Below are positions 6,148 through 63,970 of a DNA stretch of 64,000 nucleotides, piece by piece. Under the pieces are notes generated by a model, which was not told the DNA's origin, searched no databases, and worked only from the letters and a program-made list of their open reading frames with translations. Origin of the DNA: Isurus oxyrinchus (lineage: Eukaryota); contig JANJGN010000039.1 of the NCBI GenBank assembly GCA_026770705.1, positions 4,526,001 through 4,590,000 of the forward strand, given 5' to 3'. The translations under genes and the position numbers were made by a program. Numbering within the stretch: the stretch's first letter is position 1; each line of letters starts with the position of its first letter.

Positions 6148-6322
6148 ATGAATCAGAATCTTAGAACAAAATCTTGGAATTTTACAAAAATGGACAGAAG
6201 TTTAACCTCGGGGCTGTACTATCTTTCTCAAGATCGGATGTCATTAGCTGTTAGGATCGAGGGTATAATTTCGGTAATCCAAGTTGGTTACTTTCCCATC
6301 CTGACTCTTGTTGGTGTCAGCG
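6148..6322 (+). CDS. GPR139/GPR142-like class A GPCR, gene 1, coding exon 1 (N-terminus and first half of TM1)
   Basis: MNQNLRTKSWNFTKMDRSLT...IQVGYFPILTLVGVS followed by G|GTAAG donor at 6323 (phase 1). It splices in frame to the acceptor at 9388. Confidence 0.85.
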
Positions 6323-6419
6323 GTAAGAACCTATATGCAACAATCTGTTTTTTAAACCAGATTGACTGCATTACTGTTACTGTCTTTTACATTTCAGGAA
6401 GATGGAAGTCATTTGCTAC

Positions 6420-6960
6420 TGTTCCCGTTTTAATGATCTTTACCTATCCAGTCGCTCCACCCGCCTACCACGCCATTATCTAAGTCTGAACCATAGTGTC
6501 TTCGACTCCCATGCTCCATTTGGCCCTGAGCTGATTTGTGAGCCCAGACTCTTTCTATCCTTAAGCCTGTCTTCCACCAGCTGTTTAGCCTCACCCACTA
6601 TCCTCGCTGCATCAACACATCACCCGAATGATCCCTCAGCTGTACATTTGGCAAAGCCAGACTCGGCTATTAAAATGTTAATCTGGCCAGCCAATTGCTT
6701 TTACAAACGTTCTTAAAATATACCCCATACAAAACTCTGATTTTTGTAAACTCACCCATGCCAAATCTCATTCCACCAATATCCCTGTGCTCAAGGGCCA
6801 AGATTGCTTCCAGGTCTTTCAAACCGTCAATTTCAAAATTCCCAATCCTGTGATTTGATCACAATTTAATCTCTCTTCTCCAATCAATCCCACGTCCAGA
6901 AACTCACATATGGTGCCCCATGTTGTGCAGGGATTTTCAGCATGTTTGACGCATCCCTTT
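6420..6960 (+). mobile_element. L2-like LINE 3' fragment in the intron of gene 1
   Basis: Degenerate C/T-rich RT-tail-like sequence (ctcacccatgccaaatctcattccaccaatatccctgtgctc), similar to 43020-43500 and 55260-55570. Confidence 0.45.
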
Positions 6961-7329
6961 GAAACACTGGCTCTCCCTGTCCACCGGAAGCCTGTGTTAA
7001 TCACTCTCAGCTAAATATTTGTTAAACAACACGAGGCACCCTCTCCAGTTTAATTGAAACGGGCGAGACATCTCACTGTCAGCTGAAGGGCTTTCGACTG
7101 ACTACTGTTATTGCAAAGTCCATTGAGGTGCTGTAGATTGTTTTCATGGTGCTGTGCTGTGAAGGGCTGCATAAATTGAGAGAGGAAAGAGGATTTATAG
7201 GCCCAACCTTGGAAGAGTATTTGGTGCAGTAATTACAGTGCACCTGGACCTGTACCGTGACTAACAGAAAGGAGCGGAGTGAATAGGGAGTCAACCACCT
7301 GTTAACATTTCTTTGGGGGGGGGAGGAGG

Positions 7330-8330
7330 GTTGCACTGCCCGAAGCACCCCTGGATTGTCAGGAACACTTTACAAACCTACGCAGAAGTCATGTTCAGAG
7401 ACGGATGTAACTCTGACACAACAGTAAAGAGTTACAGTCCCGTGTCACCTCCTTCAACAGGACCTGGGGCCACACACCAGGGTGAGGGAGCTGCTGTCTT
7501 TGGACATTAAGTTCACATGATCATTGAAACTTCTTTTGATTCGGAACCGTCCATGCAGGAGAATAGCTGGTGGTATATTAATTATCACCCAGTATTTTGT
7601 CTAACTATGTATTCGCTAGCTAACAGAGAACATCTATGCTGGGTGCCACGTTTGTACTTTTGCTCCCTCAACAGGGAGAGGCAGTATAAGCGGTCCCAGG
7701 GCCTCCCAGGGCAGAGGGATTCCCGATGGCGTACGTGATTCTGCCGTGTCCCCATTAGAATGGACAGAGATAAAGGCTCTTAAAGAATTCTAACTGCATT
7801 CACTTGCAATTGATGTACATTTATGCACAGTACATCATGTTGGTGAATATCCAATATCCCGACTAGAGCCACAATACCTTCATTCTGAAGCACTCGGACG
7901 TTTCCAGCATCTCTGTAGCTCCATAGAGAACCACGCGGTGGCTTTTCGGAGATGAAGGCTGCCCCATCGGTAAATGGCTCAAAAATCACAACTTCGCCAT
8001 TCCCTACCTCCAACCAAGCAGGTGAACATCACACCTCAATACCAAGAGCAATGGAGTCGCACAGAGCATTTTGGATCACCCTGACATTGTGGGAAAGAAA
8101 AGCTTCTGATTACTGAGCCGTTGGGAGCGAACCCTCCATTTCACCCTGGAGTGGTTGATCATGTTCACAGTGTTCTGCTTCATCCTTCATATAATCACCA
8201 TCATAAGGAGACAGGCATTGTCACCAGGAATCCTGATACACTGCAGGAGAAGAGGAGATTGTGGTAAGATATATCCTGGATGCTTTCGCCTTTGACAGGT
8301 TGTCTAGATGTGCCCACTAAGAATCCAGTT
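7330..8330 (+). mobile_element. PIF/Harbinger (HARBI1-type DDE) transposase remnant in the intron of gene 1
   Basis: Frameshifted motifs in the correct order: CHLLQQDL (~7442), RERQY..GFP (~7672-7725), LQLMY..YIMLVNIQYP..SHNTFIL (~7800-7885), WLFGDEGCP (canonical WLLGDKGYP, ~7938). Confidence 0.75.
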
Positions 8331-9387
8331 TGCACATGACTTCCTTTCTGAAGTTGTACACAATGTAAATTTTAGTGTTTGGACAATGGAAATCCAACAC
8401 CAAGATCGAAGGACAGGGAGACCTTTGCTGATAATAGGAACACTTCAAAATAACCTTTTATTAAGAGACATTTTTTGAAGATTTCAGGTACTAAAAGAGG
8501 CTGATAGGCTATACATGTTGGTACATTTCTTTAATACAGAGGCTCCACCACACTGTAGACTAAAAGCCAGATATTTAAAAACTCCATTTGTCTTCAATCA
8601 CTGAGGAATGAACATTTCAGTCCTGCGATGTTTACAACCAGCACATTAAGCAAATTAAGGAATGAGCTGTTCCTGTTCTACACTCAAAATAATGTAATTA
8701 TGCGCTGCATTTCTGCAAATTATCATTTTATGTGTGAGGGTGTATGAGTGTTTGTGGTGTACGTGATCGCTATATTTGTATTTCGTATTTTGTAAGAAAC
8801 AGTCGTTTATCCTTTAATTTGAAATGATAATTCGCAAGAAAGCTCTCTTCGAAATTCTTAAAATAACATCAGTGGAGAGAGGAAACATTCCATCTGATAA
8901 CTGCATAGCCTTCCTGTCAGGTGATATGTTGCGCAAAATAATAAATTACCCCGTTTCACTTCTTTCCCTTAACACAATCATCACCTCTGGCTGCTCTCAC
9001 TCAAACGCATCTCCCCTCTCACACATGAGTTCCAGCATCAACCATGGGTACCACCCGTAATGGGCACCCTCGCCCGCCAATTCATGCGCCTCTATCATTG
9101 CTAAGTGCAACTATTATCCCCCGATTACTCCTTTCCTCCTTTGTCTCGCAAATATTCCCGTTCTCTCGCAAACTCCCATCTCCACCTTATTCCCACCTCC
9201 TTATTTTAACCATTCAATGTATGCTGCCTTCCACGATATCACAGTCATATTTTATGCCTTGTTTCTGGACCGTTCATTTCAATGCACCGGAGGCTGCTGT
9301 AACACATCTCCATCGCATCTCAATCATACTAGCAACTTTGGTACCAGAGTGATATAGCGTTTTATTGTTTATTACCTTTCCTTGCAG

Positions 9388-10265
9388 TTAACCTGGTCAC
9401 GATTGTGATACTCAGGCGCCGGAGCTGTGGCCTCTCCAATTGTGTTACCCGTTACCTGGTGGCCATGACAGTAGCTGATCTACTGGCCATTATCCTGGAC
9501 CTGATATTGAGGCATATTCCAATTGTGTTTGATAAGTATTTTTTTTTCCTGCGATCAATCCCAGTGTGTAATATCCATGCCGTCCTGCTTTATGCAGCCA
9601 CTGACTGTTCTGTGTGGTTCACTGTCACTTTTACCTTGGATCGATTTGTGGCCATTTGTTGCCCGAAGCTGAAAACTAAATATTGCAGTGAGAAAACGGC
9701 AGCTGTGATTCTGGGAACCGTCATTGCACTGAACTGTTCAAAGAACATTTTCTGGTATTTTTTGCTTACAGGTCAGTACTGGATGGTAAACTTCCCCTCG
9801 TTTTGTGGTTACACAAATGAGGTTCTGTTGAATCCTGTCTGGGTAACAATCGAGTTCACCCATCACATTCTAACACCATGTGTCCCATTTGTGCTGATCC
9901 TGCTCATCAATATTTTGACCATCGAGTATATTTTAGTGACCAGCAGGGCCCGCAAGAGACTCCGGCCTCACAGGAGTGGGCAAAACCCCAAAGACCCAGA
10001 GGTGGAGAATCGAAAGAAATCGATCATGTTACTCTTTTATATTTCAGCCAATTTCATCCTTTTATGGGGAATGCTAATGTTTTTTTCCATATGGATCCGG
10101 ATGTATGATTTAGGCTATTATTCCCTGTATCTAGATTTTTTTGTTATGGAATTGGGCTTCATGCTGCAGCTCCTTAGTTGCTGCACAAACACTTGGATTT
10201 ATGCTGTGACACAGACTAAGTTCAGGAAGCAGTTGTGGAAAATGTTGAAATATCCTTTCACTTAA
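9388..10265 (+). CDS. GPR139/GPR142-like class A GPCR, gene 1, coding exon 2 (TM1 end to TM7 and helix 8); full protein 350 aa
   Basis: Acceptor cctttccttgcag|TT gives V-N-L-V-T-I-V-I-L. The open frame contains YLVAMTVADLL (TM2), CSVWFTVTFTLDRFVAIC (TM3, DRF), TPCVPFVLILLINILT (TM5), RKKSIMLLFYISANFILLW (TM6), LQLLSCCTNTWIYA (TM7) and QTKFRKQL (H8). 175+878 nt = 351 codons including the stop. Confidence 0.92.
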
Positions 10266-11329
10266 ATTCTTTACTTAGTTCAATGATTAGAACAGCTGAA
10301 TATCTGACATTTATAGGACATTATTTCACATTTTCAGCAGGGGCTATGGGTCTGTCATTGGTCAGAAAGAATCAATGCGATCTTCCTGAATTTTAACAAT
10401 TAACTTAACGTTTTCAGCAGATGTGGCTGGGAGATGGGGTGGGGATTTTTGGGAGGTGGAAGTGGGTTTACTATCTGGAAGTATTAAATTACTAGGAGTT
10501 TCATGAATTCTCTCCTTGAATTTAACATTGCCAGCTGGCACGGGGGAGTCGGGGTAGGATGGTGTTGTCTTGTGCGTTCAAGGTGTCCTTATCAAAGGAA
10601 CAGAATCACTCAGCGCTTCCAATATTTTATCAGTTCATTGCTCAGTTTGAATGGAGGAAAATGTCTCTCACTGTGCGAACAAAGAAACCATGATTTTCCA
10701 GAATTATATCATTTTATCTTACTTACAGCAGCGGGGGTGGGGAGATGGTGGTGGGAGTGTGGGGTGTGCGGGGGCGAGGGGAGGCACTGAATGTTCACCA
10801 CTGACCTACTTCTCCCATCCCATTGGACGAATGCAAACCCATCGTCCCCAAGCCTCACACGGTAAGGCAGGAAACACATCTCAAGCCATTTCCACACTTC
10901 CATTGCCCACGAAACATGGCCATTATACTTCTCTCTCGCACTGATTGAACAGAGAACTAAGCCACTGACGCCTACTTCCAAAATCGCCGGTGGAACCGCC
11001 CGCTGCTTCTCAGTGATTGGACATGAATCCTCCTTCCAATACGTGAATGGAAGCCGAAATGGCATGTCAGAGTGCAACGTGGTGCGGTCTCGTCAGAGGA
11101 GATGTGGTCACAGCGTAGACTTAGGGTAACCAACAACGCAAGTAAGATAACAAAGTGAAAGTGAGGTATCAGTGGAAATCAGTGCATGGGCAGCACGCCA
11201 GCTCCGATTGAATGCTAGTGTTTACAACGGAAGTGGGTATCAATGCAGCTGCAGAAAGGGGGCGGCGTTGCAGGGGATTTGGGGTTTGTGTGTTGGGCAA
11301 GATGGCACAACTGGACCTCGATCTCCCTA

Positions 11330-13800: not shown

Positions 13801-14175
13801 CAGCTGAATGAATTTTAAACAGTAAAAGTCCCATTCACTTAGCACCAATCTGCTGAATGTATTTTAACCAGTACACACTTATCAACACTCTGCTGAATGT
13901 ATTTTAAACAGCACTAAATCTCATTCACTTCTCAATGATCTGCTGAATGTATTTTCAGCAGCACTACATCTACTCACTTATCAACACTCTGTTGAATGTA
14001 TTTTAAACAGCTCTAAATCCCATTCACTTATCGATACTCTGCTCAATTGATTTTAACCAGCAGTAAGCCCACTCACTTATCAAACACTCTGCTGAATATA
14101 TATTACCCAGCACTAAATCCACTCAATTATCAACACCCTGTATGAATGTATTCTAACCAGCACAAAATCACATTC
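13800..14175 (+). repeat. 50-bp tandem minisatellite, ~7 copies
   Basis: Consensus cagcactaaatcccattcacttatcaacactctgctgaatgtattttaac repeated head to tail with substitutions and no unique spacers. Confidence 0.9.
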
Positions 14176-14979
14176 CTGGTCGGGGAATCTTATACATTCG
14201 TATATGTTAAAATTAGTGAATTAGTATACTATAGATTTCCTGACTATATATGTTAACGTGCCAAGTTTATGCTGATGAATTAAAGTTACTGCACAAAGAT
14301 GTTATTTTATGGGGTGAGTCAGTCCATGATCAGACAGCAGTTAAAGACTGTCGTGAAGTATCGGTTCTACATATTTTTCTGAGACTCAGCCAATCCATGA
14401 GCTCCGCCCGCTGTCTTACAGGTAGCACAGTCAAGCCGGAGCTTCACCCAGGGACTCACAAACATTACCCCAAACCACCATCTCCACAACCACTCTATTA
14501 ATTCACGCACCCCATTGTTGAAAGCCACCTCATCCAATCGGAATGATTGACCAGGTGAACCACGATTCACTGAGCCTATTTGGTATTTCGTTGACATTCG
14601 CCTGACATAATCAGAGAAATCCGCCCGGTCATCAACACCTACCTCAGCCAATCAGGGAGCATCATCTCATTCCCCAAGGATTATTGAACTGTCAGCGGCC
14701 CCTGGGCTACAAACCTGCCGATTCCTTTTGAGCATTTGCAAACCAGTTCACTCGGCCCTGTTTACAATAAACTCAAACCTCCATGAGGTTTATTAACTCT
14801 CTCCCTACCGAGCCATGTTGAACCTTTCCCTCTTCAACTGCTACGATCCTGCTAAGTAATTTATAATTCTCTTCCTTAGAGCGATAGTGGTGAAATTATT
14901 CTGCAACTGTCCAAATGCTTTCAAATTATTGTAAAATTGTTGTGTCCAGTAATGAAAACAATATCCTCCTTGAGGGCTT

Positions 14980-17600: not shown

Positions 17601-17835
17601 CGCAGTGACCATAAGGGCGATATCAATGTTAACCAGAAAGAGGCTGATGTGACTCATAAAGCATTGTCGCAGCTAGCTGGCACACAGGCCTCAATGACCA
17701 GAATTAAACAGGTCATTATGATAACAGCACAATCAATAAGGAGACCAGCCGCTGCCATTGCCATCATATAGTATGTAATGCATTTGCAGAGACCATGCTT
17801 TCCTCGCAAAAGATTCACAATTGCAACGCCATTCA
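17600..17835 (-). pseudogene. GPR139-like paralogue 2, exon 2 remnant (TM1-TM3), truncated
   Basis: Acceptor ctctctcttacag|TG gives VNGVAIVNLLRGKHGLCKCITYYMMAMAAAGLL. There is an in-frame TGA at 17654, then SASFWLTL (aligns to CSVWxTV) and a degenerate DRF region. Homology stops at the Gypsy junction. Confidence 0.85.
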
Positions 17836-18299
17836 CTGTAAGAGAGAGAGACACATAACATGAGATAAACAGCAAAGATGAACATATTTTTCTTTTGTTT
17901 GCAGCAAACGGTATTCATTGCAAATTTAGTTTCTTCATGCATCTTTTAAATTGTTTAATGCAAGCATGTTTAGCATGATTTCCAATAGCAACGTGTTTTA
18001 TATATGCATCGAACCTAGTAAAAGTGCGCAGGATGGTTAAGCGTTAATTGATTATTCATCCTTAGGGAGCAGCACCCTCAATGAATTCTGAACAGCTATT
18101 GTGCACTGAAGATTCAGCGTGCTGAGGGTGAATGTGTACTGGACTGACTGAAGGTCCAAAAAAGCCTCGGCTTGTTAAATTTTAAATGAGAAAAAGGAGG
18201 TGGAAAGAGCGAATTCACGTGTGAAGGTGCAATGTGGACTGTGAAATGCGGGCACAAAATAAAGATTTAGCATAGTAGAGTTCTGTTCTGGAAGATGTA

Positions 18300-28011: not shown

Positions 28012-28147
28012 NNNNNNNNNNNNNNNNNNNNNNNNNNNNNNNNNNNNNNNNNNNNNNNNNNNNNNNNNNNNNNNNNNNNNNNNNNNNNNNNNNNNNNNNN
28101 NNNNNNNNNNNNNNNNNNNNNNNNNNNNNNNNNNNNNNNNNNNNNNN
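28012..28147. other. Assembly gap (136 N) next to a GA/TG simple repeat
   Basis: Run of N. Confidence 1.
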
Positions 28148-28934
28148 TGTGAATAAATGCATGTGCTTCTTGGAAGAAATATCCTCTAAAGGACCATAGA
28201 TAAAGGTGACAGTGAAGCAGAACGAGGTGATTTTTGTTGAAAATTTAGGAACCACAGTGCACTTAAACATCCGACTATTGTACATAAATAAAACTGGGAG
28301 TTCCTCCTGACAACTCCCTCCTAATATTGGATCTGTGATAACGACAAGGAATTTGGTGTCTGCCATTCACTCCAAGTAGCAAAAAACACAATTTGAGGTT
28401 GAACACTTTCATCGCTTCAGGAACAAAAGCTCCCGAAATTTACCTGGAGCAGACAAAAGCAGGAAGAAAATACCCAAAAGTGATTCATCAGATATGGAGA
28501 AAGGGAACAGTGTGCCGCGAACTGGGCTAAAATCCCAGCTCTTTGTTGCATTAAATATCTAAACGGATAAATGACCTGGGCAAAACATTCAGTCACAAAA
28601 ATGTATCTAAATACCTTTATCAACAATGCGCCGGGGCAATCGCAAAAATGAAGTAAACAGTGTCTGTATACAATCCACTGGAAGTGCTGAGTGAGGGCGT
28701 TGTGCTCAATGCCCGAATCAGCTGAACGTGGATATAACGATGCAAGTGAAATTTTGCTCCAAACTATATATTGGGATGCCATGGGACAGTAGCAGGTAGA
28801 AGTTTTTTAGTCCATTGGTTTTAAAGTGTCAACAGCGGGTGTTAGAAAACGGGAAAATCCGGACAGCCACGTCTGGCAATTTCACTTTTCGGATGGATTT
28901 AGAAGCGGAAGTCGGAATCCGAACCAGTGAGTGA

Positions 28935-50360: not shown

Positions 50361-50559
50361 GGGGAGGTCACGCAGGACCAGGAAAGGTGGAAAGCACCAC
50401 TATGATATCTATGTCTCTCTCGTACATGCTGCAGGAGGACCATGTCATTATCATAGATCCTGGTGTCCTAGCTTAATATCTGATAGTCCACAGAGACTGT
50501 TGAAGACGGTGAATTGAGTGATTGAGGCGCCTGGCCACAAAGGTTCAAGAGAAGCAATC

Positions 50560-51670
50560 CCATGAAGAAGGAAGAGCAGGGTTTCTCACACACGCTGTCC
50601 AGTAGTGACAGCGAGCCCTGGCTGTTCGATGCTTTGCAGCACCCACAGGCTGCCTGCTATTCCTGCAGGTTACTGAGACCCAGTGTCAACGGTGGCTGCA
50701 CATATCTAAGGACCTGTTAGCTCACATCTGCCATCTACTGCACGCCAGGCGCCATGAGCAAGGAGGGCAGCCACTGCCACTATCTGTAAAAGTGATTGTG
50801 GCAAAGAAATTGTTTCCCTCTGGCACCTGTCAGGGCTGCACATCTGACCTCTGTGCGATTTCACATCCCCCATCCACAAATATTCCCCCGAAATCATCTA
50901 TGCAAACTTCTGCAAGAGAAACAATTTTGTGCATTTTTCCAGGAACCAGGGCAGCGAGATGCAAGCGCCAATGAATTCGCCCTGATCTCGGGCTTCCAAC
51001 AGGAACATGGTACAATTCAATGCACGCATGTGTCCCTCATGTCTCTGTCACTACATGCAATGGACGTCATCAACCACAAGGGTTTCCAATCACCGAATGT
51101 GAAGCTGTTACCAAAAACAAGCCTGCAAGGTTGCAATTGACTTTCATGAAGTGGACACAATACGTAAAACCTGAATCACTCGTAGTTCCCTGCGGTCTTC
51201 CAGCGTCTACATACGCTGCAGGGTTGGATCCATGGGGACAGGAGCTACCTAAAGAGTGGTGCTTTATGACACAGAGGCTGATTCGAGAGACTGCAGCAGA
51301 GTGATGGTGCAATGCATCTCATGCAGCAGCTCGCGTATTGGTGGAGCAAACCATTCAGCTGCTGAAGATTCAGTCCCTGGTTCCTGGATCTGTCCGATGG
51401 AGCGCTGCAATGCACTGGGCAGAGCGTGTCACGTGTCACGTGTCATTTTTGTTTTTTGTGCCCTTAACAAGGTGGCCTTACAACGACGTGAGGAGGCGAT
51501 GGAGGAGTTGCCCGTCTCCTTCAAAGAGGAGGGTACTGACGGGGATGAGATGATGAGATCCTCCGTGTTGATGATGACAGGGAAAAGGCTATTGCATTGT
51601 CTGGATTAGGCAGGCGCACTTGGCAGGTTCTCATTGCTTCCAGTTTTGTCGAGGATGATGACGACATGCA
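50560..51670 (+). mobile_element. PIF/Harbinger DDE transposase pseudogene (HARBI1-like)
   Basis: PLPLSVKVIVAKKLFPSGTCQGCTSDLCAISH, FALISGFQQEHGTIQCTHVSL (GAIDCTH), INHKGFQSPNVKL (NRKGFHSLNVQL), LVEQTIQLLKIQ and LDLSDGALQC, in order, with an acidic tail. Frameshifted. Confidence 0.88.
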
Positions 51671-53340: not shown

Positions 53341-54499
53341 CTCTGTCTCATTCTCTCAGGAGGATGTCCAGGCCGTGACCTATGCAGCAGGAAGCTAGTG
53401 CTTCCCGGAACTCCTTGCTATTTCCTTGGCCTGTCTCAATGTGATAAGGGTTTTGTAGGTAAATCAGACAAGGTGTGTGGTTTCCCTTTCTGCCCCCCAT
53501 CATTAGCCTGATTGCAGGTAATTTTAGTGAGGTGTTGGGGGGTGGGGGCACGAGGGAGCTACCGCTGTGTGTGTGTCATATCTGGAAAAGGTTAGCGTCG
53601 CACAGGCTGGCTGACCACAGCGTTGCATGGCAAGTGATAAGATGTCAAAAGCCAGGTCACAAATGCAGTTATTGCCCGAAGCCTTTGAGCAGTTTTCCTC
53701 ATTTAGGTTTGTGTTCATTCTGGGGGTTAAGCATTGCGTGTGTTCAGTGTACTGCCTCACCTGAAGGGGAAAACAATCATTTTGGGCTTGTGGGTAAGGG
53801 AGGGTCCGAGTTTTGAGTGAATAGTTGAGCACTTGACATGTTCTCTTGCGTTCATTGGCAGGGTGTGTTGGCAGAAACATAGGACATGTTTAGAGGTTGG
53901 TGCCTTTTAGGGTTGAGCATTAATAGATTGTTACAGCAGTGTGCACAGAGGGAAAAGCAAATTGGCAGCACTGCATTTGAAAAGCAAGCACAGCAATGAC
54001 TATGAGGACACGAAGGGAAATTTTCCTAATTTCGCAGCTCTCGCAGGGCAATCATTTCCCAGTCATCAGTGATATGATCAGTAACTTCTGACAGTGCAAT
54101 AGTCAGAATTCTCCTCCAGTGGCCTCTCAGAGTCACATTCAGACAGAAACTGTTTCCAGGGACAGGACAGGAAGAACCCAACTCCTCAACCGACCTTTTC
54201 AGGGTAGAAACCAGACCCCCTACACAGTCGGGAGTCAAGGAAACACATGTTTTTTTTTCCTGTCAATGTGCCAGGAATTGGGTCAGGATGGGCTGCGGAT
54301 TTTGGATGCCAATAATTGTTCTGACACGTTCTTGAGAGGATAATGTCGCTGCCAGCTTTAATTAATCCTTCAATTCCATGTGTTCAATTTTGGCAACAAG
54401 CATGTTATATGACACTTCAGCGCAAAGCTTTGGAAGCATTGCGATATTTGTAATTCCTGGCAGGAGAGACAATGGGATACATGAATAACCTAAGGGTCT

Positions 54500-55570: not shown

Positions 55571-55659
55571 CAAATGCGTCTGAGTGTGAGTACCACAATG
55601 GAAAGGTATCCTCTCACTTTCCTCTGCTCACTGACAATGCATTCATTCTCAGACCCTAC

Positions 55660-57115
55660 GTGTGTGTCTGTTGTGTGTGTGTGTGTGTGTCATTGTGTGT
55701 GTGAGTGTTTGTGTGGTGTGCACCAATGGGCGTATGTGTGTGTCTCTTGCATGAGTTTATATGTGCTTGTGTGTGCATGTGTTTGTGTATATGTGTGGGT
55801 GTGTATTAGTGTTTGTGTTTCTATGCGTTTGTGTATGTGCGTGTGATTAGAGTGTATGTGTGTGAAAGTGCGAATCTCTGAAGTATGTGTGACTTAGTGT
55901 AAATGTGAGTTACTAAGTTGAGTACGTGTCTGTGTGAATTTGTTTCAGCAGGTTTGGGTGTCAGTGTGTGTCTGCATGTCCCTGTGAGTACTTGAGTGTG
56001 CGATTGTATATGTTTGTGTCTATACATATATTTATTTCATGTGTTAGTGTGAATGGGTGCATCTGTGTGAATCTCTGTGTGTATGTGTACGTGAAAATGT
56101 TTGTGCGAGAGAGAGACAGATATGAAATGTGTGTGTGTCAATGTTTGACGGTGACTGGGAGTGTGTGTCTGTGTGTGTGATGCTTTGTTTGCTTGAATGT
56201 CTGTGCATGTGTGTGACATAGATTGTGTAGTGTGGCTTGGTGCAAATGAGATTTTCTAAGTTCGAATTTGTGTATGTGTGCTTGCTTCTGTGCAGGTGTG
56301 GGTCTGAATATGAGTTTGCATCCCTGTGTAGAGCTTGTGCACTCGTGTCTGTGTGTTTATGCTTGTGTGTGTATATGCTTGTCTGCGTGCTTGCGCGTGT
56401 GTAAGCTTGTTTGCATTTGTGTGTGTTTCTGTGTATGTGCGTGTGTTTTATGGGCATGTGAGCAAGTCCGCGCATGTATACATTCAATATCTGTGTTTGC
56501 ATGGTGTGTATCTGTGCACATGTGTGTTAATGTGTACAGCTGTCTGTGTGTGTCCGTTTGTGTGTGCGTGTGTGCATGTTTGTGTGTCTGCACATGAATA
56601 TTTTCCATGTGTGTGTATGCGCCCGAATCTCTGTGAGTATTTGTGCCTGTCTCTCTATTTGTGTGTGTGAGAGAGAGAAAGAGAGAGAGAGGGAGAGGGA
56701 GGAATGAAATGTGTGTTTATGTGTTTGATTGTGACTAGGAGTNNNNNNNNNNNNNNNNNNNNNNNNNNNNNNNNNNNNNNNNNNNNNNNNNNNNNNNNNN
56801 NNNNNNNNNNNNNNNNNNNNNNNNNNNNNNNNNNNNNNNNNNNNNNNNNNNNNNNNNNNNNNNNNNNNNNNNNNNNNNNNNNNNNNNNNNNNNNNCGTGC
56901 AATTGCATGTGCATGTTTCTGTGTGTGCATCTATTTATTCTGTGTGTATGTGTGCGTGGTTGTTTGTGTGTGCATGTATAAGTGTGAGATTAATTATCTG
57001 TCTTTATTTGTGTCTTTGTTCGTGCCTGTGTTTATGTGTGTGTGCGTGTGCATGTGCATGAGAAAGAGATGAATTTCTTGTGCCTGTGCGTGCGTGTGCA
57101 TGTGTGTGCCTGTAT

Positions 57116-57150
<35 letters not shown>

Positions 57151-57180
57151 TTTCTGTGTGTGCACGGATGTGTGTGTGGC
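55660..57180. repeat. Degenerate (TG)n simple repeat containing gap 56743-56895
   Basis: Dinucleotide TG tract. The Cys/Val and His/Thr ORFs here are artefacts. Confidence 0.95.
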
Positions 57181-57184
57181 TCTT

Positions 57185-60100
57185 TTTATCATTATTTCAA
57201 GGGATGTGGGCTACACTGGTTGAGCAGCATTTAATGTCCATCACTAATTTCCCTTGACAAAGGAGTGCGGATCTGTTCCCTAAATCACTGCATTCCATGT
57301 GGTCTAGGTATACCCACAGTGCTGTTACGGAAGGATTGCAGGGTTTTTACCCCGTGCCTGTGAAATGTTGGTGAGTGACTTGTAGAGATAATTCCAGGTG
57401 CTGCTGTTCACATGTATCTGCGACTCTTTTCCTTCTGGATGTTAATTTCGAAGAATCCGTCTAAGGAGCCTTGGTGAGCCCCTGCAGTGCATATTGTAGA
57501 TGACATTCAATGTGCCTCTACTGTGCGTCAGTAGGGAAAACTGGATTTTGTGCCAATCCAGCGGGGATGCGTTTCCCGGACGGTGTCAGGCTTCGTGGGT
57601 GTTGTTGGAGATGCAGACATCCAGCGAAGCGGGTGGTGGACAGTATCTGAGGAATCAGGAGATGTGTTACTCTCTGCAGGTTTCCTAAGCCCTGACCAGC
57701 TCTTGTAGCCACAGTATTAATATGGTTAGCGCTGTTCAATTTTTGGTCAACGATAAACACCAGGATGTGCATAGTGGCGGATTCAGCGATGGTAATGGTA
57801 TTTAATGTAAAGATGTGATGGTTAGATTACCCCTTGTCCTTGAAGATGTTTGCCTGGCGCTTCCCTGGTTCAAACGGGACTTCTCAATTGTGAGCCCAAG
57901 ACTCCATATTGGCCTTGTATTCCTGCATATGGAAAAACAGTGCTCAGTATCTGAGGTGTTGTGAAAGGTCCTGGGAATTGTGCAATCATAAGCGAACATC
58001 CACCCTTCTGACTGTATGAAGGAAGAAAGTTCTTGATGGATCAGATGAAGATGTTTGAGTCTCGGACGCTGTTCTGTGGAACTCCTGTCGTAAATACCTC
58101 CTGCTGAGATGACTGACCTCCAACAACCACAACACTGAACTCTCTCCTCTATCCTTCACACGTTCTGTAATCTTCTCTTTTTTCCTAAATTCGTTTTTAG
58201 TTGAATCCACTCAATTTATTTTTATTCAAATAGCAATCATTATATCCACGTTTTATCCACCTTCTGTCCCATTTTATATCGAATTTCGCCACCACTGCTC
58301 CCCCATCCCATCATATACAAAGTCAACTTTTGCTAGTTCCATATTAGCCTTTCTTCTTCTGTTATCACGTTCTTCTTTATTACCTTGTTGCCCCTATCAG
58401 CACCTTATTTCTTTACACTAACCATTACCATTAACACGATCTTCGTCCCTTAGTTCATGACATCGTTGCCATTCCCTTTTTGGTCTCCACGTGGTGGCAG
58501 TTTTCTGTCCAGCTCGAACCGCCGCAGCCCCCTTGAACACTGTATATTTCAACACATTCCCACCTCTATTCTTCTGTGAGGAAGGTTCATACGGACTCCA
58601 AATTTTAACTCTGAACTTACCAAATCAGATGCTGCCAGGCTTGCTGCTTTTGTCCAGCATTTTCTGTTTTCACACCACAACCATCATCCTTTGTGTTCTC
58701 TATGAATCAAACCAGTGGAGGGTTCCCCCTAATTCTCACTGTATCCAGTGTTGCAAGGGCTCCTTTATGCCACAGTCGTTCAGGTGTGTTCCTGCCAGTC
58801 ATTTGTATCTCACCTCGGGATTTCAAAACGTTTGTCCATTTTTCGAACATAGCCGTAATGAGGCCAGGATTTGAGTGACCTTTGTGAAACCTAAACTGAG
58901 CATTAGTTTGATGGTAAAAATGCACTCACTCTCATCTCAATTCAGGAGTACAGCTCTTTTGTCCATTATTGAAAAATGACTGTAATGAGTTCAGGATCTG
59001 ATTGGCACTGGTTAACTTCCACCTGGGCTTCAGTGAGCAGGTTATTGCTAAACCAATCCCACTTGACATCACTGTTATTAACCCTTCTGTCATTTTACTG
59101 ATAATAGAGAGTAGACTGATGGGTCGGTAATTGGCTGTATATGAGTTGTTCTGCTGTTTGTGTACGGGACACACTTGGGCAAATTTCCACCTTGGTAGCT
59201 AAATGCCAGTTTTGTGTCAGTATTGGAACAGCTTCACTAAGGTCGTTGCATGCCATGAAGAACAACCCGTCAGATATGTTGGCAGAATATTGTTATGCCC
59301 ATGGCCTTTGCAGAATCCCGTGAGTTCTGCCTTCCCTCGATATCACGTGGAGGGAACAGAATTGTCTGAATAATAGCAGCGCTGAAACTGGGGACATCCG
59401 AATGAGGAAGAGATGGAGCAGCCAATCATCACTTCAACCTAAGATTGTAACACATGTTTCAGCCTTAGCTTTCACATTGTCTTGCTGTGCTCCCCACCCT
59501 GAGAGTGGAGTGATTTGTAGCGCCTCTTCCAGCAACAATTGTTTAATTGTCCACCACCATTCACGGATGTATGTGTCAGCTTAGATTTGAATCATTGATA
59601 GTGGGATCACACAGCTCTGTCTATCGTTTAATGCTTATGGTGTTTGTCATGAAGGTTATCCTTTGTGATAGCTTCACCAGGGTGACATCTCAATTTCATG
59701 TATGCCTGTTGCTGCTTCTGACACACACTCTCGTTCTGCTCGTTGAACCAGAGTTGATCCACTGGCATGATTGTTTTTTTTTAGACTGGGGAATCAGCCA
59801 AGCCATGCGGCTACAGGTTGTTTCTGAGTACAAAACTGTTACTGCTAATTTCCCACAGGACCACAATGATGCCGAGTCTTGTGTTGCTGAACCTGTTCGA
59901 AATCAATCCCATTTAGCACGGCGGTACTGCCACACGATGGATTGTATGCTCATTGTGAGGGTGGGATTTTGCCTCCAAAATGACAGTGCATTGGGCACTC
60001 CTACTAGTGTTGCAGAGAGGTGGCCACAGCTGCTGCATGGACAGTTCCACCTCATGCAGGCAGTTAGGTGAGGATGAGGCCAAGTATGTTTTCCAGTCTT

Positions 60101-60900
60101 ACTGGACGGCAGAGCACCTGCTGCAAGCCCAGTATAGCATCTAAACCATTTGACACTTGGCCAGCTCGGTCAGTAGCGGTGATACCAAACCACTCTTGGT
60201 GAAGATCGTTGGTATCCGCAACACATAGTACATTCTGGGCCCTTGTCACCCTGAGATCTTTGCTCAAATTTTGTTGAACTTGGAAGAGCAATTATTCGTC
60301 AGCTGAGCAGGGTGACGGGGGTGGAGGGGGTGGGTTGGTGGGTGGGGAAGGGTGGCGGGCGGTGGGGTGGTGGTGTGGTATGTGTAATCACCTGCCCAAT
60401 TGTGGCATGATGCTATAGGACTTCATGCATACAGTATTCGCTATTGATGGCTTGCAGGGCAACGCCCTTCCGACTGCACACCACTGCCTTCACCTCTTCT
60501 GTTTCTGTCCTACCAGTGGGATAGGATACACCCAGGGATGGTGATGGTGCTGTATGGGACATTATCTGTCAGGTGTGAATCCGTGAGGGTGGCTATGTCA
60601 GGCTCTTGCATGACTAGTCTTTGAGGCAACTGTCCAATTATGGCTTTAGCCCCAATAACAATAAGGACGTCATTGCAGGGCTGAGAGGGATGAGTTTACA
60701 TTGTTGTTTACTGTGCATAGGTCAACTCTGTGTCAGCTTTCAGTTTCATTCCTTTATTTGAGGTTTTCAGCTCTTTGATACAACTGATTGATGTATTAAC
60801 TCATTAACAGATCAACCACATTGAAGCTGATCTGGATTCACAGATAAACGAGACCAGGTTACGATGGCAGAATTCATTCCAAAAAAGGCATTAATGAACC
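57185..60900 (-). mobile_element. Near full-length decayed CR1/L2-group LINE (EN and RT), interrupted by a nested insertion
   Basis: EN: RVTRAQNVLCVADTNDLHQEWFGITATDRAGQV (60064-60291). CPVHKQQ..ANYRPISLLSIISKM (58932-59174). MFAYDCTI at the FADD site (57999). HINTVATRAGQGLGNLQRVTHLL. 3' tail at ~57190. Confidence 0.9.
58134..58673 (-). mobile_element. Nested Penelope-like fragment flanked by an 8-bp target-site duplication (ACCACAAC)
   Basis: ACCACAAC at 58126-58133 and 58674-58681, with the host LINE continuous across the site. The end cagatgctgccaggcttgctgcttttgtccagcattttctgtttt is the reverse complement of 28940-28990. Confidence 0.7.
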
Positions 60901-61352
60901 AGATGTGCGTGTCTTGGTTTTTCATCGTGCGTGTGTGTGATTGCGCATGTCAGCATTTTTCTAGGTGTTTGCTTCTATGCCACTCTGTGCCAGGGTATGT
61001 GATTGTGTGAGTGTGTGTGTGTGTGTGTGTGTGAATGTGAGTGTGGCTGTACGTGAGTTTATGTGAGGTGGGGGGGGGGGAGCAGAGGAATATATGTGTC
61101 TATGCAATATAGAGAGTGAGGGAGATAGGAAAAGTGAGTAAGATGATGAGCACATGAGCCTCTGTCCTTTTATTGTGTGCAGATGTGTGTTTGTCAGTCT
61201 GTTTGTGTGTAGGGGTGAATTCGTGTGCACCTGTGTATGCTTATGTGTGTGTGTTTTTTTTGTGTGTGCGCGTGTGCTTTGTTGCTGCTTCTCTGTCTCT
61301 TTTTCATATGTGTTTGTTTGTGCCTGTGTTTCTAAATGCGTATGCACGCACG

Positions 61353-61385
<33 letters not shown>

Positions 61386-61720
61386 GTGTGTGTGTGCGTG
61401 TGACTATATATGTGTGTGTGCATATGAGTGTGTGTGTTTTTCTGGAGGCGGGCATGTTTGTGNNNNNNNNNNNNNNNNNNNNNNNNNNNNNNNNNNNNNN
61501 NNNNNNNNNNNNNNNNNNNNNNNNNNNNNNNNNNNNNNNNNNNNNNNNNNNNNNNNNNNNNNNNNNNNNNNNNNNNNNNNNNNNNNNNNNNNNNNNNNNN
61601 TGTGTGTGTATGTGCCTGCATGTGTTTGTTCCAATGTTTGCGTAGACATGTGTATTTACCTGTGTGTATGTTTATTTATATGGGTGTGCATGTGTGTGCA
61701 TGTGTGTCTGTATGTATATC
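60900..61720. repeat. Degenerate (TG)n simple repeat containing gap 61463-61600
   Basis: TG tract and run of N. Confidence 0.95.
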
Positions 61721-63090
61721 AGTCCAATGCTAGGAGAGGAGTCCAATTTCTTGTCTCTCTTCTGGAAGTGTGCGGAAACTATAAGAGTCAGGTTTCTGTG
61801 CACCGGGACATGGTTCGTGGTCAAATGTGAAACCGGCTTTCCCTTTTCGCTCCTCTCTCACTCATCATCCCTTCCGCCACCCACTCTCCTTTCTCCCCTG
61901 TCATTGTCACATCATATCCCTCTGGAAGATGGATCGAGGAGGGGTTCACATCTTGCTTGTAATGGGAATGTTAATGTATGGAGACATGAAATCCAACTCG
62001 ATGGTCACAGGTCAGCGAGTAAGCGTATCTTAGTAAAAGTAACCTTTACAACTGACATTGTGCAACAGATATCTTTTGGAAACATTGAATAACTGACAAC
62101 ATATTGAATATATGGAAGTCAGTTATTCTAAGTAATGAAGCAGAACCTTAGGGAAAATATCCCCGTCCAAGAAAAAGAAGAACAATGTTTGGAATCAGCT
62201 CAGGCAATTACAAGAGGCTAAAACGTTCTACCTTTTGATATATTTCTTCATAACCACAATTTAGACTAATAGCCAGAATTTCGCCACCTCCATTTGTCTT
62301 CAAAAAAGGAGAAAATCAAGTACCAGCTTAAGGAAGGTAATGAAGCGGCCTGTTTCTCTCCCATGCTTCTGATACACTAAGCGTATGCTACTCCTCTAGA
62401 GTCCCTCTTTTAACGTGTGTGTTTGAGTGTGTGTGTTTGTGCCTTTGTGTCTTTGAGGAATGACATCTTGCTACACTTCGTACTCTTGTAAGCAATACAT
62501 TTTAATCATTTCCTTTAATCTTTTAACTTTACAAGAAAAACTACTTAGTCACTTTTCTTAAAAACTGCCACACTGGAATGTTTAAACACTCCTTCCCTGA
62601 AATGCATCCTGTTGTAGTTAGCAGAGAAATGGGGAAAACATCCAGATCACTTCCCTTTCCTTAACACATCCATCACCTCAGGCTCTGCCCAATCATACGT
62701 GTTCCTCAGTTCGCCCCTCGCCCCTGGGCCGCCCTATTATTGCCTGGCTCCTCCGTTAGCGTTGGGTTTCAAAGTTACGTTTGAATCACTCCTGACTTTT
62801 CCGATCTCCAACTAAATCCCCTTGTTGTCCCCTGGGCCCAACATTCATCCTTTGTACCCTCATTACCTCTACCGCCCGCGATAATCCTGCATCCACTTCC
62901 TCCACCCCTTCAGCTTTTGTTATTTTTCTCGGCTTCCTCAACTCGATCGCAAACCTTCCCATTTGTTATTTCAGGTTCATTTTTCACAACATATTACAGG
63001 CTGCAATAACATACAGAAACTAATCAATTAAACGAGTTGCTTTGACTAAGCCTGATGTATAGTCTAATTGTTTATTTCCCGTCCAGGCAG

Positions 63091-63970
63091 CAAACTTTGT
63101 CATGCTTGTGATCCTCAGGAGCAACAGATGTGGTCTGTCGAAATGTGTAACTCAGTACCTGGTGGCCATGGCTGTGGCTGACGAAAGGTCGTTATTCCTG
63201 ATGTGATAATAAGGCACATTCCATTCTTGTTTAAGGAACAGTTTTACTTCTGGAACTCCATCCACGTGTGTAATATCCATACCATCTTGCTTTAAGCAGC
63301 CACAGACTGTCCTGTCTGTTTCACCGTCACTTTCACCTTTGGGGGATTTGTGGCCATTTGTTCCCTGAGGCTGAAAACTGAATATTGCAGTGAGAAAATA
63401 GCCACTGTGCTTCAGGGAAAATTGATTGTGCTGAGCTGTTCAAATAACATTTTCTGTTATTTTATGATAACAGATCCATATTGGCTGATGAACGGCCCCT
63501 GATTTCTGTGATTGTGCATGGAATAACCACGAATCTCTGTTCTGGGTAGCAATTGAGTTCCATTGTGTTTTCCATTTACCATGATTCTGCTGCTTAGTGT
63601 TTTCATAGGTAAGCAGATTTTAATGAAAGGCAGAGAACACAGGAGATTCCGGGCTCACAGAAGTGGGATAATCCCGGCGATCCATAGAGTGAGAGCAGAC
63701 GGAAATCTATGCATTTTCTGTCTGTTATCTCAGCCAATTTCTTCCTGTTTTGTTCAATGTCAATTGTTTATTCTATTTGGAGACTGATGTGGAATTTGGG
63801 CTATAAGTCGATGTATCTGTATCGTTTTGTTCAGGAAATAGGCTTCATGCTGCAGCTCCTGATTTGCTGCACAAACACTGGGATTTATGCAGTGACCGGG
63901 CTAAGTTCACATAGTATTTAAGAATGTGCTGCAACATCTCTTCACCCGAATTTCTTCAACATATTAAACA
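63091..63970 (+). pseudogene. GPR139-like paralogue 3, exon 2 (near full length, multiply disabled)
   Basis: Acceptor ..gtccaggcag|CA gives ANFVMLVILRSNRCGLSKCVTQYLVAMAVAD, then a frameshift. LL*AATD (stop where gene 1 has TAT), DRF changed to GGF, TGA at ~63499, a deletion in TM5, then FLSVISANFFL and QEIGFMLQLLICCTNTGIYAVT. Collinear with 9388-10265. Confidence 0.92.

What the first reader, a model, noticed from the sequence alone, without database searches (positions are those of the whole stretch)
6148..63970. Birth-and-death cluster of GPR139/142-like receptors: candidate lineage-expanded chemosensory or amino-acid receptor repertoire
Seen in sequence: three divergent paralogues within 58 kb, in both orientations, one intact and two pseudogenised. 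All share a two-exon layout with a phase-1 intron in TM1, and they are the only host genes in TE-saturated DNA. Established: mammalian GPR139 and GPR142 are single-copy class A GPCRs activated by aromatic amino acids (L-Trp, L-Phe), and cartilaginous fishes have unusually few classical OR genes. Inference: clustering, rapid pseudogenisation and divergent N-termini are the genomic signature of sensory receptor families such as OR, TAAR and V1R. This may therefore be a large, little-studied receptor family used for chemosensation or peptide/immune sensing.
Basis: partly seen in the sequence, partly recalled or inferred. Interest (0 to 1): 0.85.

Follow-up and report, generated by a model that had tools for sequence, protein, structure and literature searches.

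The report
Expanded shark GPR139-like receptor gene cluster
This stretch of cartilaginous-fish DNA holds one healthy gene and four decayed copies of a very large receptor family, which exists in over a hundred copies per shark genome, has no description in the papers I could search, and might be how sharks sense chemicals, though nothing yet shows where it is used.

Summary
Gene 1 is an intact two-exon class A GPCR: exon 1 at 6148-6322, a phase-1 GT-AG intron, exon 2 at 9388-10265, 350 codons, no assembly gap inside. A clear pseudogene lies at 63053-63996 (+). I found three further remnants, not one: 14212-14376 (+), 17666-17884 (-) and 28166-28474 (-). The last ends 19 nt from the gap at 28012-28147.

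All four copies that keep the start of exon 2 keep the same phase-1 acceptor. They are therefore DNA-level duplicates, not retrocopies.

The family is huge:
- 1358 database clusters match at E<=1e-3.
- 53 of the best 120 come from one shark species.
- It occurs in sharks, skates, a stingray and a chimaera.

It is not the GPR139/142 orthologue (29.8 bits to human GPR139). Its nearest named kin is a single-copy gene of amphibians and sturgeon.

Signalling motifs are nearly invariant, while pocket and extracellular positions vary. Two of the five GPR139 agonist-contact residues are lost.

"TE-saturated" was not verified. Expression is unknown, so the chemosensory reading stays a hypothesis. The scan has flagged the same family before on other DNA of this genome.

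The parts
5950..6013 (+). Putative core promoter of gene 1: TAATTA (5950), TAATTG (5976), TCACAGGAGGG (5984), TATTTATA (6006). It lies 135-198 nt upstream of the ATG.
Evidence: Read. The degenerate pattern HD-gap-HD-gap-TATA matches once in the window, with 0 of 100 shuffles giving a match, but the pattern was written after seeing this site. Its function is inferred.
6148..6322 (+). Gene 1 exon 1: ATG, N-terminus with an NFT glycosylation site, first half of TM1. 175 nt, ending in phase 1.
   Evidence: Translation is open. BLASTP to P0003 residues 2-60 gives 49% identity, E 4e-15. HMM E 2.2e-9. 53 of 61 family queries hit it, best E 1e-19. A GT donor sits at 6323.
6323..9387 (+). Gene 1 intron (3065 nt, GT...AG, phase 1).
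   Evidence: Read. The junction falls at the same residue (VGV|xVNL) where family proteins pass from N-terminus to core.
8492..8608 (+). Intron block shared with the 63-kb copy.
   Evidence: 70% identity over 106 nt to 62209-62303 and 76% over 62 nt to 62253-62314 (D10). The offset is the same as for the exon matches (53703-53706).
9388..10265 (+). Gene 1 exon 2: second half of TM1 through TM7, helix 8 and the TAA stop. Intact.
   Evidence: Open frame. Pfam 7tm_1 at 49.9 bits. HMM E 1.8e-161. Up to 73% identity to shark proteins. AlphaFold2 model with pLDDT 87.2 and pTM 0.84.
14212..14376 (+). Remnant: TM7 and helix 8 only, with two stops.
   Evidence: tblastn best E 6e-6, hit by 61 of 61 queries. 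HMM E 2.1e-5.
17666..17884 (-). Remnant: start of exon 2 (end of TM1, ICL1, TM2), with the acceptor kept.
   Evidence: tblastn best E 1.3e-7. HMM E 3e-7. TTACAG acceptor at the homologous phase-1 place.
28166..28474 (-). Remnant: start of exon 2 through TM3, with stops and the acceptor kept. It ends 19 nt before the assembly gap.
   Evidence: tblastn best E 8.7e-7. The HMM alone is not significant (E 1.8-6.4). CTCCAG acceptor at the homologous place.
28012..28147 (.). Assembly gap next to the 28-kb remnant. It was not filled.
   Evidence: Nothing above the control level lies beyond it.
61463..61600 (.). Assembly gap inside a GT-rich array, upstream of the 63-kb copy. It was not filled.
   Evidence: D1, D2.
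62209..62314 (+). Intron block of the 63-kb copy, homologous to 8492-8608.
   Evidence: D10.
63053..63996 (+). Pseudogene: all of exon 2, with at least four frame changes, in-frame stops and DRF changed to GGF. The acceptor is kept.
   Evidence: blastn 72% over 882 nt. Six HMM pieces in frames 0, 2, 2, 0, 2, 1. Three-frame reading. tblastn best E 6e-65.

Best explanation
The window holds a small birth-and-death cluster of a class A GPCR family specific to cartilaginous fishes.

The family descends from one ancestral jawed-vertebrate gene of the wider GPR139 group. That gene survives as a single copy in amphibians and sturgeon and has been amplified to over a hundred genes per genome in sharks, rays and chimaeras.

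Copies arise by DNA-level (tandem or segmental) duplication of the whole two-exon unit. Most then decay. Here one copy (gene 1) is intact and four are in various stages of loss.

The protein works as an ordinary G-protein-coupled receptor. The cytoplasmic coupling core is held nearly constant across the family. The extracellular loops and the positions lining the binding pocket differ from paralogue to paralogue, so different members most likely recognise different ligands.

Shown here: the gene structure, the family's size and spread, its phylogenetic position, and the pattern of conservation. Inferred: that it signals through G proteins, and that its diversity serves ligand discrimination. 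Not known: ligand, tissue and cell type.
For: Gene model.

Family size:
- 1358 of 1897 candidates match at E<=1e-3.
- 117 of the best 120 carry a name, and all of those are sharks.
- 53 of the 120 are distinct 90%-identity clusters from Heterodontus francisci alone.
- Among 50%-identity representatives, 743, 154 and 107 match at E<=1e-3, 1e-10 and 1e-30.

Spread: skates (Leucoraja, Amblyraja, Rhinoraja), the stingray Hypanus and the chimaera Callorhinchus.

Tree of 69 rows (quick search):
- The 48 chondrichthyan rows plus gene 1 form one clade (SH-aLRT 89).
- The 7 amphibian and sturgeon rows form one clade (100).
- These two, with an unnamed clade, sit together (98), apart from a second conserved GPR139-like gene that sharks also keep.
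- The amphibian gene shares the family's DPEM-x-RR-x-SI motif.
- It looks single-copy: one row per species among 20 amphibian rows.

DNA-level duplication:
- The phase-1 acceptor is kept in 4 of 4 copies.
- An intron block is shared, collinear with the exons.

Constraint across the 55 representatives:
- D3.49 in 54, R3.50 in 55, W6.48 in 53, N7.49 in 52 and Y7.53 in 52.
- The columns matching the GPR139 pocket residues have no residue above 20 of 55.
- Mean column entropy is 2.37 bits on the extracellular side against 1.33 on the intracellular side. 1 of 290 circular shifts reaches that difference.

Fold: AlphaFold2 pLDDT 87.2. Foldseek finds at least 500 GPCR chains at E<=0.001.
Against: - No expression evidence of any kind exists for gene 1.
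- Gene 1 departs from the consensus at 6 of the 120 columns that are at least 95% conserved among 106 close relatives. The median for the others is 2, and 10 of 106 have 6 or more. It could therefore be under somewhat relaxed constraint, although its frame is whole.
- Within gene 1's own subfamily the outside-versus-inside entropy contrast is weak: 36 of 290 shifts reach it.
- The clade supports come from a quick search only. The careful search did not finish.
- No bona fide GPR139 or GPR142 sequence could be put in the tree.
- Many database 'genes' are automatic models, and some are visibly fused or partial, so counts of functional genes are uncertain.
Confidence: 0.85

Rival explanations
1. 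The family is a chemosensory repertoire (olfactory, gustatory or solitary chemosensory cells). Each sensory cell would express one or a few members, making up for the very small OR, ORA and TAAR sets of cartilaginous fishes.
For: - Family size, clusters with pseudogenes, and variable pocket and loop positions over a fixed signalling core.
- Gene 1 has two homeodomain-type sites, an O/E-like site and a TATA box within 64 nt upstream.
- Catshark has only 5-8 receptors in each of OR, ORA and TAAR (abstract of PMC6368271).
Against: - No tissue data. No RNA run held the gene.
- The catshark study PMC11979771 says its 50 most specific 'brain & olfactory epithelium' genes included no GPCR (passage).
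- The gene has two coding exons, unlike OR, TAAR and V1R genes.
- The O/E-like site is a poor match to the consensus as I recall it.
Confidence: 0.3
2. The family senses internal signals (peptides, metabolites, or immune or inflammatory cues) in brain, gut or blood cells. It would resemble expanded chemokine-, MRGPR- or FPR-type receptor sets.
For: - After GPR139, the nearest solved receptors for the family profile are peptide receptors: PrRP, neurotensin, angiotensin AT2, ghrelin, CCK and neuromedin U.
- The model has a beta-hairpin ECL2. By my recollection that is typical of peptide-binding class A receptors.
- Within gene 1's subfamily, variation lies mainly in ECL1, ECL2 and ECL3 rather than in the deep pocket.
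- An unchecked first-reader note describes another cluster interleaved with antigen-receptor segments.
Against: No expression or ligand data. Over a hundred paralogues is more than known endocrine or peptide receptor families hold.
Confidence: 0.3
3. The expansion is largely a neutral by-product of segmental duplication in repeat-rich DNA. Most copies, perhaps including gene 1, would have no function.
For: - 4 of the 5 copies in this window are dead.
- Gene 1 has 6 departures at conserved columns against a median of 2.
- Contigs of run X2 pile up about 400-fold on the conserved cores relative to the lowest bin.
Against: - Signalling motifs are kept in 52-55 of 55 divergent representatives.
- Members persist across sharks, rays and a chimaera.
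- Gene 1 has 350 open codons and intact splice sites, while its neighbours have accumulated many stops.
Confidence: 0.1
4. Gene 1 is simply the shark orthologue of GPR139 or GPR142, as the automatic database names suggest.
For: NCBI names most relatives 'probable G-protein coupled receptor 139'. Human GPR139 is the best solved match.
Against: - It scores only 29.8 bits against human GPR139.
- A different conserved gene (Latimeria P0240, with catshark, zebra shark and sawshark copies at 60-66% identity to it) scores 70.4 bits against GPR139 and forms its own clade.
- There are hundreds of paralogues.
- Residues matching R244 and N271 are replaced by L229 and F257.
Confidence: 0.02
5. The copies are processed retrocopies or cargo of a transposon.
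For: The family is dispersed over many contigs. The cores have high summed depth.
Against: - The intron acceptor is kept at the same place in 4 of 4 copies.
- A homologous intron block is present.
- No transposon domain appears in the 20 longest other frames.
- No terminal repeats surround the gene.
Confidence: 0.03

Closest known systems
Human GPR139 (PDB 7vug, 9m42)
   Same: - It is the best solved match for the family profile: E 4.4e-24 and 88.3 bits, against 63.4 bits for the next receptor.
- Both are class A and both have a DR[YF] motif.
- Both lack the proline of NPxxY. The human chain reads N-F-F-L-Y where the family reads N-T-x-I-Y.
- Residues matching F109, H187 and W241 are Y68, H158 and W226 in gene 1.
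   Different: - The single gene scores only 29.8 bits against it.
- R244 (6x51) and N271 (7x38), which hold the polar part of the agonists in PMC5430874 (passages), are L229 and F257 in gene 1. Among the 106 close relatives, 105 have L, F or I at the first position and 95 have F at the second.
- The proline at 6.50 is absent in gene 1 and in 47 of 55 representatives.
Single-copy 'probable GPR139' gene of amphibians and sturgeon (P0245, P0410-P0429)
   Same: - It groups with the chondrichthyan family: joint clade SH-aLRT 98 with an unnamed clade, and 76 for the pair alone.
- It shares the DPEM-x-RR-x-SI motif at the ICL3/TM6 border and the DR[FY] motif.
- Its best non-amphibian hits are family members: 175 bits, against 146 for the other GPR139-like gene.
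   Different: - It gives one row per species in 20 amphibian rows, at 66-74% identity across frogs, caecilian and salamanders. It is therefore conserved and not expanded.
- It is only 28-33% identical to shark members.
- Absence from other bony vertebrates is not shown, because the search needs shared 5-residue words.
Conserved GPR139-like gene of non-mammalian jawed vertebrates (Latimeria P0240 type). It may be one of the extra GPR139/142 subtypes that PMC6504862 calls GPR210A/B.
   Same: It is 32% identical to gene 1 and belongs to the same wider group. Sharks have it too: P0278, P0281 and P0285.
   Different: - It forms a separate clade (SH-aLRT 98).
- It is closer to human GPR139 (70.4 bits).
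- It has ERF instead of DRF and no DPEM motif.
- It is not expanded.
- The link to the name GPR210 is my guess from a passage. I did not match accession numbers.
Vertebrate odorant receptor, TAAR and V1R/ORA families
   Same: All are large, lineage-specific class A repertoires in genomic clusters with many pseudogenes. All show variable ligand-facing positions over a fixed signalling core.
   Different: - This family has two coding exons with an intron in TM1.
- It is no close sequence relative of those families.
- Expression in sensory neurons is not shown.

Membership tests
Class A (rhodopsin-like) GPCR | Matches Pfam 7tm_1 above its cut-off | tested here: met
   49.9 bits against a cut-off of 30.5, covering profile positions 2-260 of 260.
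Class A (rhodopsin-like) GPCR | Seven-helix fold | tested here: met
   The AlphaFold2 model of the exon 2 product has pLDDT 87.2 and pTM 0.84, with helices for the end of TM1, TM2-TM7 and helix 8. Foldseek finds at least 500 PDB GPCR chains at E<=0.001, with TM-scores of 0.6-0.75. The first half of TM1 lies in exon 1 and was not joined.
Class A (rhodopsin-like) GPCR | E/DRY motif at the end of TM3 and the TM3-ECL2 cysteine pair | tested here: met
   Gene 1 has D84-R85-F86. D is kept in 54 and R in 55 of 55 representatives. C60 and C139 are conserved in at least 90% of alignment A1.
Class A (rhodopsin-like) GPCR | NPxxY in TM7 and CWxP in TM6, taken literally | tested here: not met
   N267 and Y271 are kept, but position 7.50 is T in 47 of 55 representatives. 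W226 is kept (53 of 55), but position 6.50 is P in only 8 of 55. Human GPR139 also lacks the TM7 proline, so this is a trait of the group and not a defect.
GPR139/GPR142 subfamily (orthology) | GPR139 is the closest characterised receptor | tested here: met
   The family profile scores 88.3 bits against 63.4 for the next solved receptor. The single gene gives E 3.9e-6 against 1e-3 for the next.
GPR139/GPR142 subfamily (orthology) | One-to-one orthologue with high identity | tested here: not met
   It scores 29.8 bits against human GPR139. There are hundreds of paralogues. Another conserved gene, which sharks also keep, is closer to GPR139.
GPR139/GPR142 subfamily (orthology) | Agonist-contact residues F109, H187, W241, R244 and N271 (PMC5430874, passages) | tested here: not met
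   By the profile alignment to the GPR139 chain, gene 1 has Y68, H158, W226, L229 and F257. Three are kept or similar, and the two polar anchors are replaced. The TM5 alignment differs, so H158 is the less sure assignment.
GPR139/GPR142 subfamily (orthology) | Placement in a tree that includes bona fide GPR139 and GPR142 | not testable with these tools
   No such sequences were returned as usable ids.
Vertebrate chemosensory receptor repertoire (as a kind) | Large lineage-specific repertoire in clusters with pseudogenes | tested here: met
   The window holds 1 intact copy and 4 decayed ones.
Vertebrate chemosensory receptor repertoire (as a kind) | Variation concentrated at ligand-facing positions | tested here: met
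   In the broad family, entropy is 2.37 against 1.33 bits, with 1 of 290 shifts reaching that difference. Pocket-equivalent columns are highly mixed. The signal is weak inside gene 1's own subfamily (36 of 290).
Vertebrate chemosensory receptor repertoire (as a kind) | Expression in sensory cells, one or few receptors per cell | not testable with these tools
   No RNA run holds the gene. The single read-laying run returned contigs only.
Vertebrate chemosensory receptor repertoire (as a kind) | Homeodomain plus O/E promoter sites, as in mammalian OR genes (recalled) | tested here: inconclusive
   The sites are present at 5950-6013. But this is one gene, the pattern was written after seeing it, and there is no binding or cross-species test.
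Processed retrocopies | Loss of the intron | tested here: not met
   The acceptor and polypyrimidine tract sit at the same phase-1 place in 4 of 4 copies. An intron block is shared.

The most novel reading that the evidence does not exclude
This family is a major, so far unrecognised chemoreceptor repertoire of cartilaginous fishes. It would be a new vertebrate chemosensory GPCR family, born from a GPR139-related gene, that takes the place of the nearly missing OR, TAAR and ORA sets and is expressed one receptor per sensory cell.
Probability: 0.3. Interest if true: 0.9.

Novelty: new variant of a known kind. Interest (0 to 1): 0.6.

Why it matters
Published accounts describe cartilaginous fishes as poor in GPCRs and in odorant receptors. 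These are the whale shark paper PMC8455134 (passages) and the catshark paper PMC6368271 (abstract: 5-8 receptors each in OR, ORA and TAAR, with V2Rs dominant).

A class A family with over a hundred members per genome, present from chimaeras to sharks and rays, does not fit that picture. I found it in none of the six answered literature searches.

If it is sensory, it would explain part of how sharks smell or taste and would add a new family to the short list of vertebrate chemoreceptors. If it is not, it would be one of the largest expansions known to me of a non-sensory, peptide-receptor-like GPCR.

In either case the single-copy amphibian and sturgeon counterpart gives a tractable entry point, for example in Xenopus, to the ancestral function.

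Tried and rejected
**Approaches that led nowhere**
- Expression. The look-up of sequencing runs found no RNA run holding gene 1. Read laying on 5800-10800 gave contigs only. One run guessed to be RNA (X10) has a 745-nt contig that matches 98 nt of a paralogue, not gene 1. This says nothing about tissue.
- Copy number from read depth. The summed depth is 55131 on the TM2-TM3 core against 138 in the lowest bin. The run's coverage is unknown and the tool warns that this is not a copy number, so I use it only as a sign of many near-identical copies.
- Transposon content. 0 of 20 long open frames had a Pfam match above cut-off; one zf-CW match fell below it. Rfam gave 0 matches and the tRNA scan 0.
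- Further exon 1 copies and the continuation of the 28-kb remnant. The only hits had E 0.24 and 0.62, weaker than the reversed-window control at 0.058. I rejected them.
- Careful tree. It did not finish in two runs of 288 s, so I report the quick tree.
- In the first tree I had wrongly grouped the salamander protein with the Latimeria type. It fell inside the shark family on a long branch. Adding frogs, a caecilian and sturgeon put it outside, next to the family.
- dN/dS. No coding DNA of other members was obtainable, so it was not done.
- ESM Atlas. It only repeated the automatic 'probable GPR139' names.
- The spliced 350-codon model was never joined. Exon 1 and exon 2 were translated, searched, aligned and folded apart. 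The model therefore lacks the first half of TM1.
- Supplementary tables of PMC11979771 (tissue-specific genes) were closed and may bear on expression.

Full report
**1. What is in the window**

The window has three N runs: 28012-28147, 56743-56895 and 61463-61600. The longest open frame, 9333-10262 (+), is a rhodopsin-type receptor: Pfam 7tm_1 at 49.9 bits against a cut-off of 30.5.

The sequence upstream shows a polypyrimidine tract and an AG ending at 9387. It also shows an ATG at 6148 opening a 175-nt exon that ends before GTAAGA at 6323.
- That exon translates without a stop.
- It aligns to residues 2-60 of the Scyliorhinus torazame protein P0003 with 49% identity, E 4e-15, and stops exactly where P0003 passes into the part encoded by exon 2.
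- It carries an NFT site.

Gene 1 is thus 6148-6322 plus 9388-10265: 350 codons, a phase-1 intron in TM1, and no gap inside.

Upstream at 5950-6013 lie TAATTA, TAATTG, an O/E-like TCACAGGAGGG and TATTTATA. A degenerate form of this layout occurs once in the window and in 0 of 100 shuffles. I wrote that pattern after seeing the site.

**2. The other copies**

An HMM built from 61 family proteins and tblastn with the same 61 proteins find five loci:

| Locus | Strand | What survives | Best tblastn E |
|---|---|---|---|
| gene 1 | + | intact | — |
| 63053-63996 | + | all of exon 2, broken | 6e-65 |
| 14212-14376 | + | TM7 and helix 8, two stops | 6e-6 |
| 17666-17884 | - | end of TM1 to TM2 | 1.3e-7 |
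| 28166-28474 | - | end of TM1 to TM3, with stops | 8.7e-7 |

The same queries on the reversed window reach no better than E 0.058.

The 63-kb copy is 72% identical to gene 1 exon 2 over 882 nt. Its six HMM pieces lie in frames 0, 2, 2, 0, 2, 1. It has in-frame stops, and DRF is changed to GGF.

All four copies that keep the start of exon 2 have a polypyrimidine tract and AG at the same phase-1 position. A 62-106-nt intron block about 0.8-0.9 kb upstream of exon 2 is shared by gene 1 and the 63-kb copy at 70-76% identity, with the same offset as the exons. The copies therefore arose by duplication of genomic DNA, not by retroposition.

No second exon 1 was found.

**3. The gaps**
- None touches gene 1.
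- The gap at 28012-28147 begins 19 nt beyond the last aligned residue of the 28-kb remnant. Nothing above the control level lies beyond it. Whether that copy continues there cannot be known.
- The other two gaps sit in GT-rich arrays. The one at 61463-61600 lies where the intron or exon 1 of the 63-kb copy would be.
- I filled none of them.

**4. The rest of the window**

0 of the 20 longest other open frames match a Pfam family above its cut-off. Rfam and the tRNA scan find nothing. Repeats within the window are few. "Only recognisable genes" therefore holds, but "TE-saturated" is not shown.

**5. The family**

The exon 2 product finds 1358 proteins at E<=1e-3 among 1897 candidates.
- The best 120 are 65-73% identical over most of it (a few less).
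- 117 carry a name, and all of those are sharks.
- By species: 53 Heterodontus francisci, 25 Heptranchias perlo, 14 Rhincodon, 10 Stegostoma, 4 + 4 Scyliorhinus, 3 Chiloscyllium, 2 Carcharodon, 1 Mustelus and 1 Pristiophorus.
- Nearly all are automatically named 'probable G-protein coupled receptor 139'.

None is identical to gene 1, so this species' own proteins are not in the collection. Three unnamed metagenome proteins start at the exon 2 boundary, which marks them as genomic DNA.

Against one representative per 50%-identity cluster there are 743, 154 and 107 hits at E<=1e-3, 1e-10 and 1e-30. Named members of diverse representatives include skates, a stingray and the chimaera Callorhinchus milii.

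**6. Relation to GPR139**
- Human GPR139 is the best solved match but a weak one for the single gene: 29.8 bits.
- For a profile of 55 family members it scores 88.3 bits, against 63.4 for the next receptor, the PrRP receptor.
- A different conserved gene is closer to GPR139 at 70.4 bits. It is Latimeria P0240, with copies in catshark, zebra shark, sawshark, sturgeon, teleosts, amphibians and reptiles.
- PMC6504862 (passage) already lists extra GPR139/142 subtypes in coelacanth, gar and fishes.

A further gene is present in salamanders, frogs and a caecilian: 20 amphibian rows at 66-74% identity, with sturgeon at 46%. In a 69-row tree (quick search, SH-aLRT):
- the 48 chondrichthyan rows plus gene 1 form one clade (89);
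- the amphibian and sturgeon rows form one clade (100);
- these two, with an unnamed clade from unlabelled assemblies, stand together (98), apart from the Latimeria type (98).

The amphibian gene shares the family's DPEM-x-RR-x-SI motif, which the Latimeria type lacks. True GPR139 and GPR142 could not be included in the tree.

**7. How it probably works**

The AlphaFold2 model of the exon 2 product (pLDDT 87.2, pTM 0.84) shows the end of TM1, TM2 to TM7, a hairpin ECL2 and helix 8. Foldseek returns class A receptors throughout, with GPR139 at rank 9 of a flat list.

Across the 55 divergent representatives:
- The signalling residues are almost fixed: D3.49 in 54, R3.50 in 55, W6.48 in 53, N7.49 in 52 and Y7.53 in 52.
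- The extracellular half has a mean column entropy of 2.37 bits against 1.33 for the intracellular half. 1 of 290 circular shifts reaches that difference.
- The columns that match the GPR139 agonist contacts are highly mixed.

Within gene 1's own subfamily (106 proteins) those pocket columns are nearly fixed. Variation there sits in ECL1, ECL2, ECL3 and the tops of TM6 and TM7, and the contrast is weaker (36 of 290).

By the profile alignment gene 1 has Y68, H158 and W226 at the places of F109, H187 and W241. It has L229 and F257 at the places of R244 and N271, the polar anchors for the agonists in PMC5430874 (passages). Nothing therefore supports aromatic amino acids as ligands.

Gene 1 departs from the consensus at 6 of 120 strongly conserved columns. 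The median among its relatives is 2, and 10 of 106 have 6 or more.

**8. Expression**

No RNA run holds gene 1. Laying four runs on 5800-10800 gave the following:
- Run X2 (same organism label, kind unknown) covers all 30 bins, the intron included.
- Summed depths are 55131 and 35362 on the TM2-TM3 core and 22938 on TM7, against 138-2147 elsewhere. Many near-identical copies exist, but this is no copy number.
- Contigs cross the exon 1 donor and the exon 2 acceptor with 3-9% differences.
- A run guessed to be RNA has one contig of a paralogue.

Tissue remains unknown.

**9. Literature**

Six answered searches found no description of this expansion. The catshark paper PMC11979771 (passages) reports no GPCR among its 50 most specific 'brain & olfactory epithelium' genes. 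The whale shark paper (passages) speaks of a paucity of GPCRs in cartilaginous fishes.

**10. Earlier notes of this scan**

The same family has been flagged many times on other DNA of this genome. This includes a follow-up giving over a hundred genes per genome and two on a conserved promoter layout. My counts and the promoter of gene 1 agree with them. I did not see their sequences.

**11. Verdict**

This is a real, correctly located cluster of a very large and apparently undescribed chondrichthyan GPCR family, distantly tied to GPR139. The birth-and-death reading is supported. The sensory reading is open.

Noticed in passing
window 8492-8608 and 62209-62314: An intron block is conserved between gene 1 and the 63-kb pseudogene at 70-76% identity, as high as the exons and with the same offset. 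In gene 1 it holds a TATTTAAAA. It could be an intronic regulatory element or an internal promoter.
   Followed up: partly
window 13803-14169: A tandem array with a 50-nt unit (about 6 copies, 76% matches) lies directly upstream of the TM7-only remnant at 14212-14376.
   Followed up: no
window 55748-57221 and 60964-61717: GT-rich low-complexity arrays enclose the assembly gaps at 56743-56895 and 61463-61600. The gaps probably reflect assembly trouble in these arrays.
   Followed up: no
window 301-413 and 50412-50524: An inverted pair of 113 nt, 74% complementary, lies 50 kb apart. It is probably two old copies of one interspersed repeat.
   Followed up: no
window 9547-9718 and 10140-10171 (run X1): A coral metatranscriptome run holds four short contigs (88-153 nt) that are 91-97% alike to the receptor's conserved cores. 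This looks like shark or ray nucleic acid in an environmental sample, or contamination.
   Followed up: no
proteins P0001, P0002 (Heptranchias perlo): These database models of 462 and 493 aa carry a second TM5-TM7 block. The annotator seems to have fused two neighbouring copies. Other models are partial or fused to unrelated genes (TMEM183A, a RING protein). Gene counts taken from annotation are therefore rough.
   Followed up: partly
proteins P0256, P0260, P0267, P0270 (ENA/Logan, no organism given): An unnamed clade on a very long stem groups with the shark family and the amphibian gene (SH-aLRT 98). Its organisms are unknown.
   Followed up: no
window 51253-51606 (+): A sub-threshold match to the CW-type zinc finger (17.5 bits, cut-off 27.5) lies in a GC-richer stretch (50-54 kb, GC 0.50-0.51). 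It is probably chance.
   Followed up: partly
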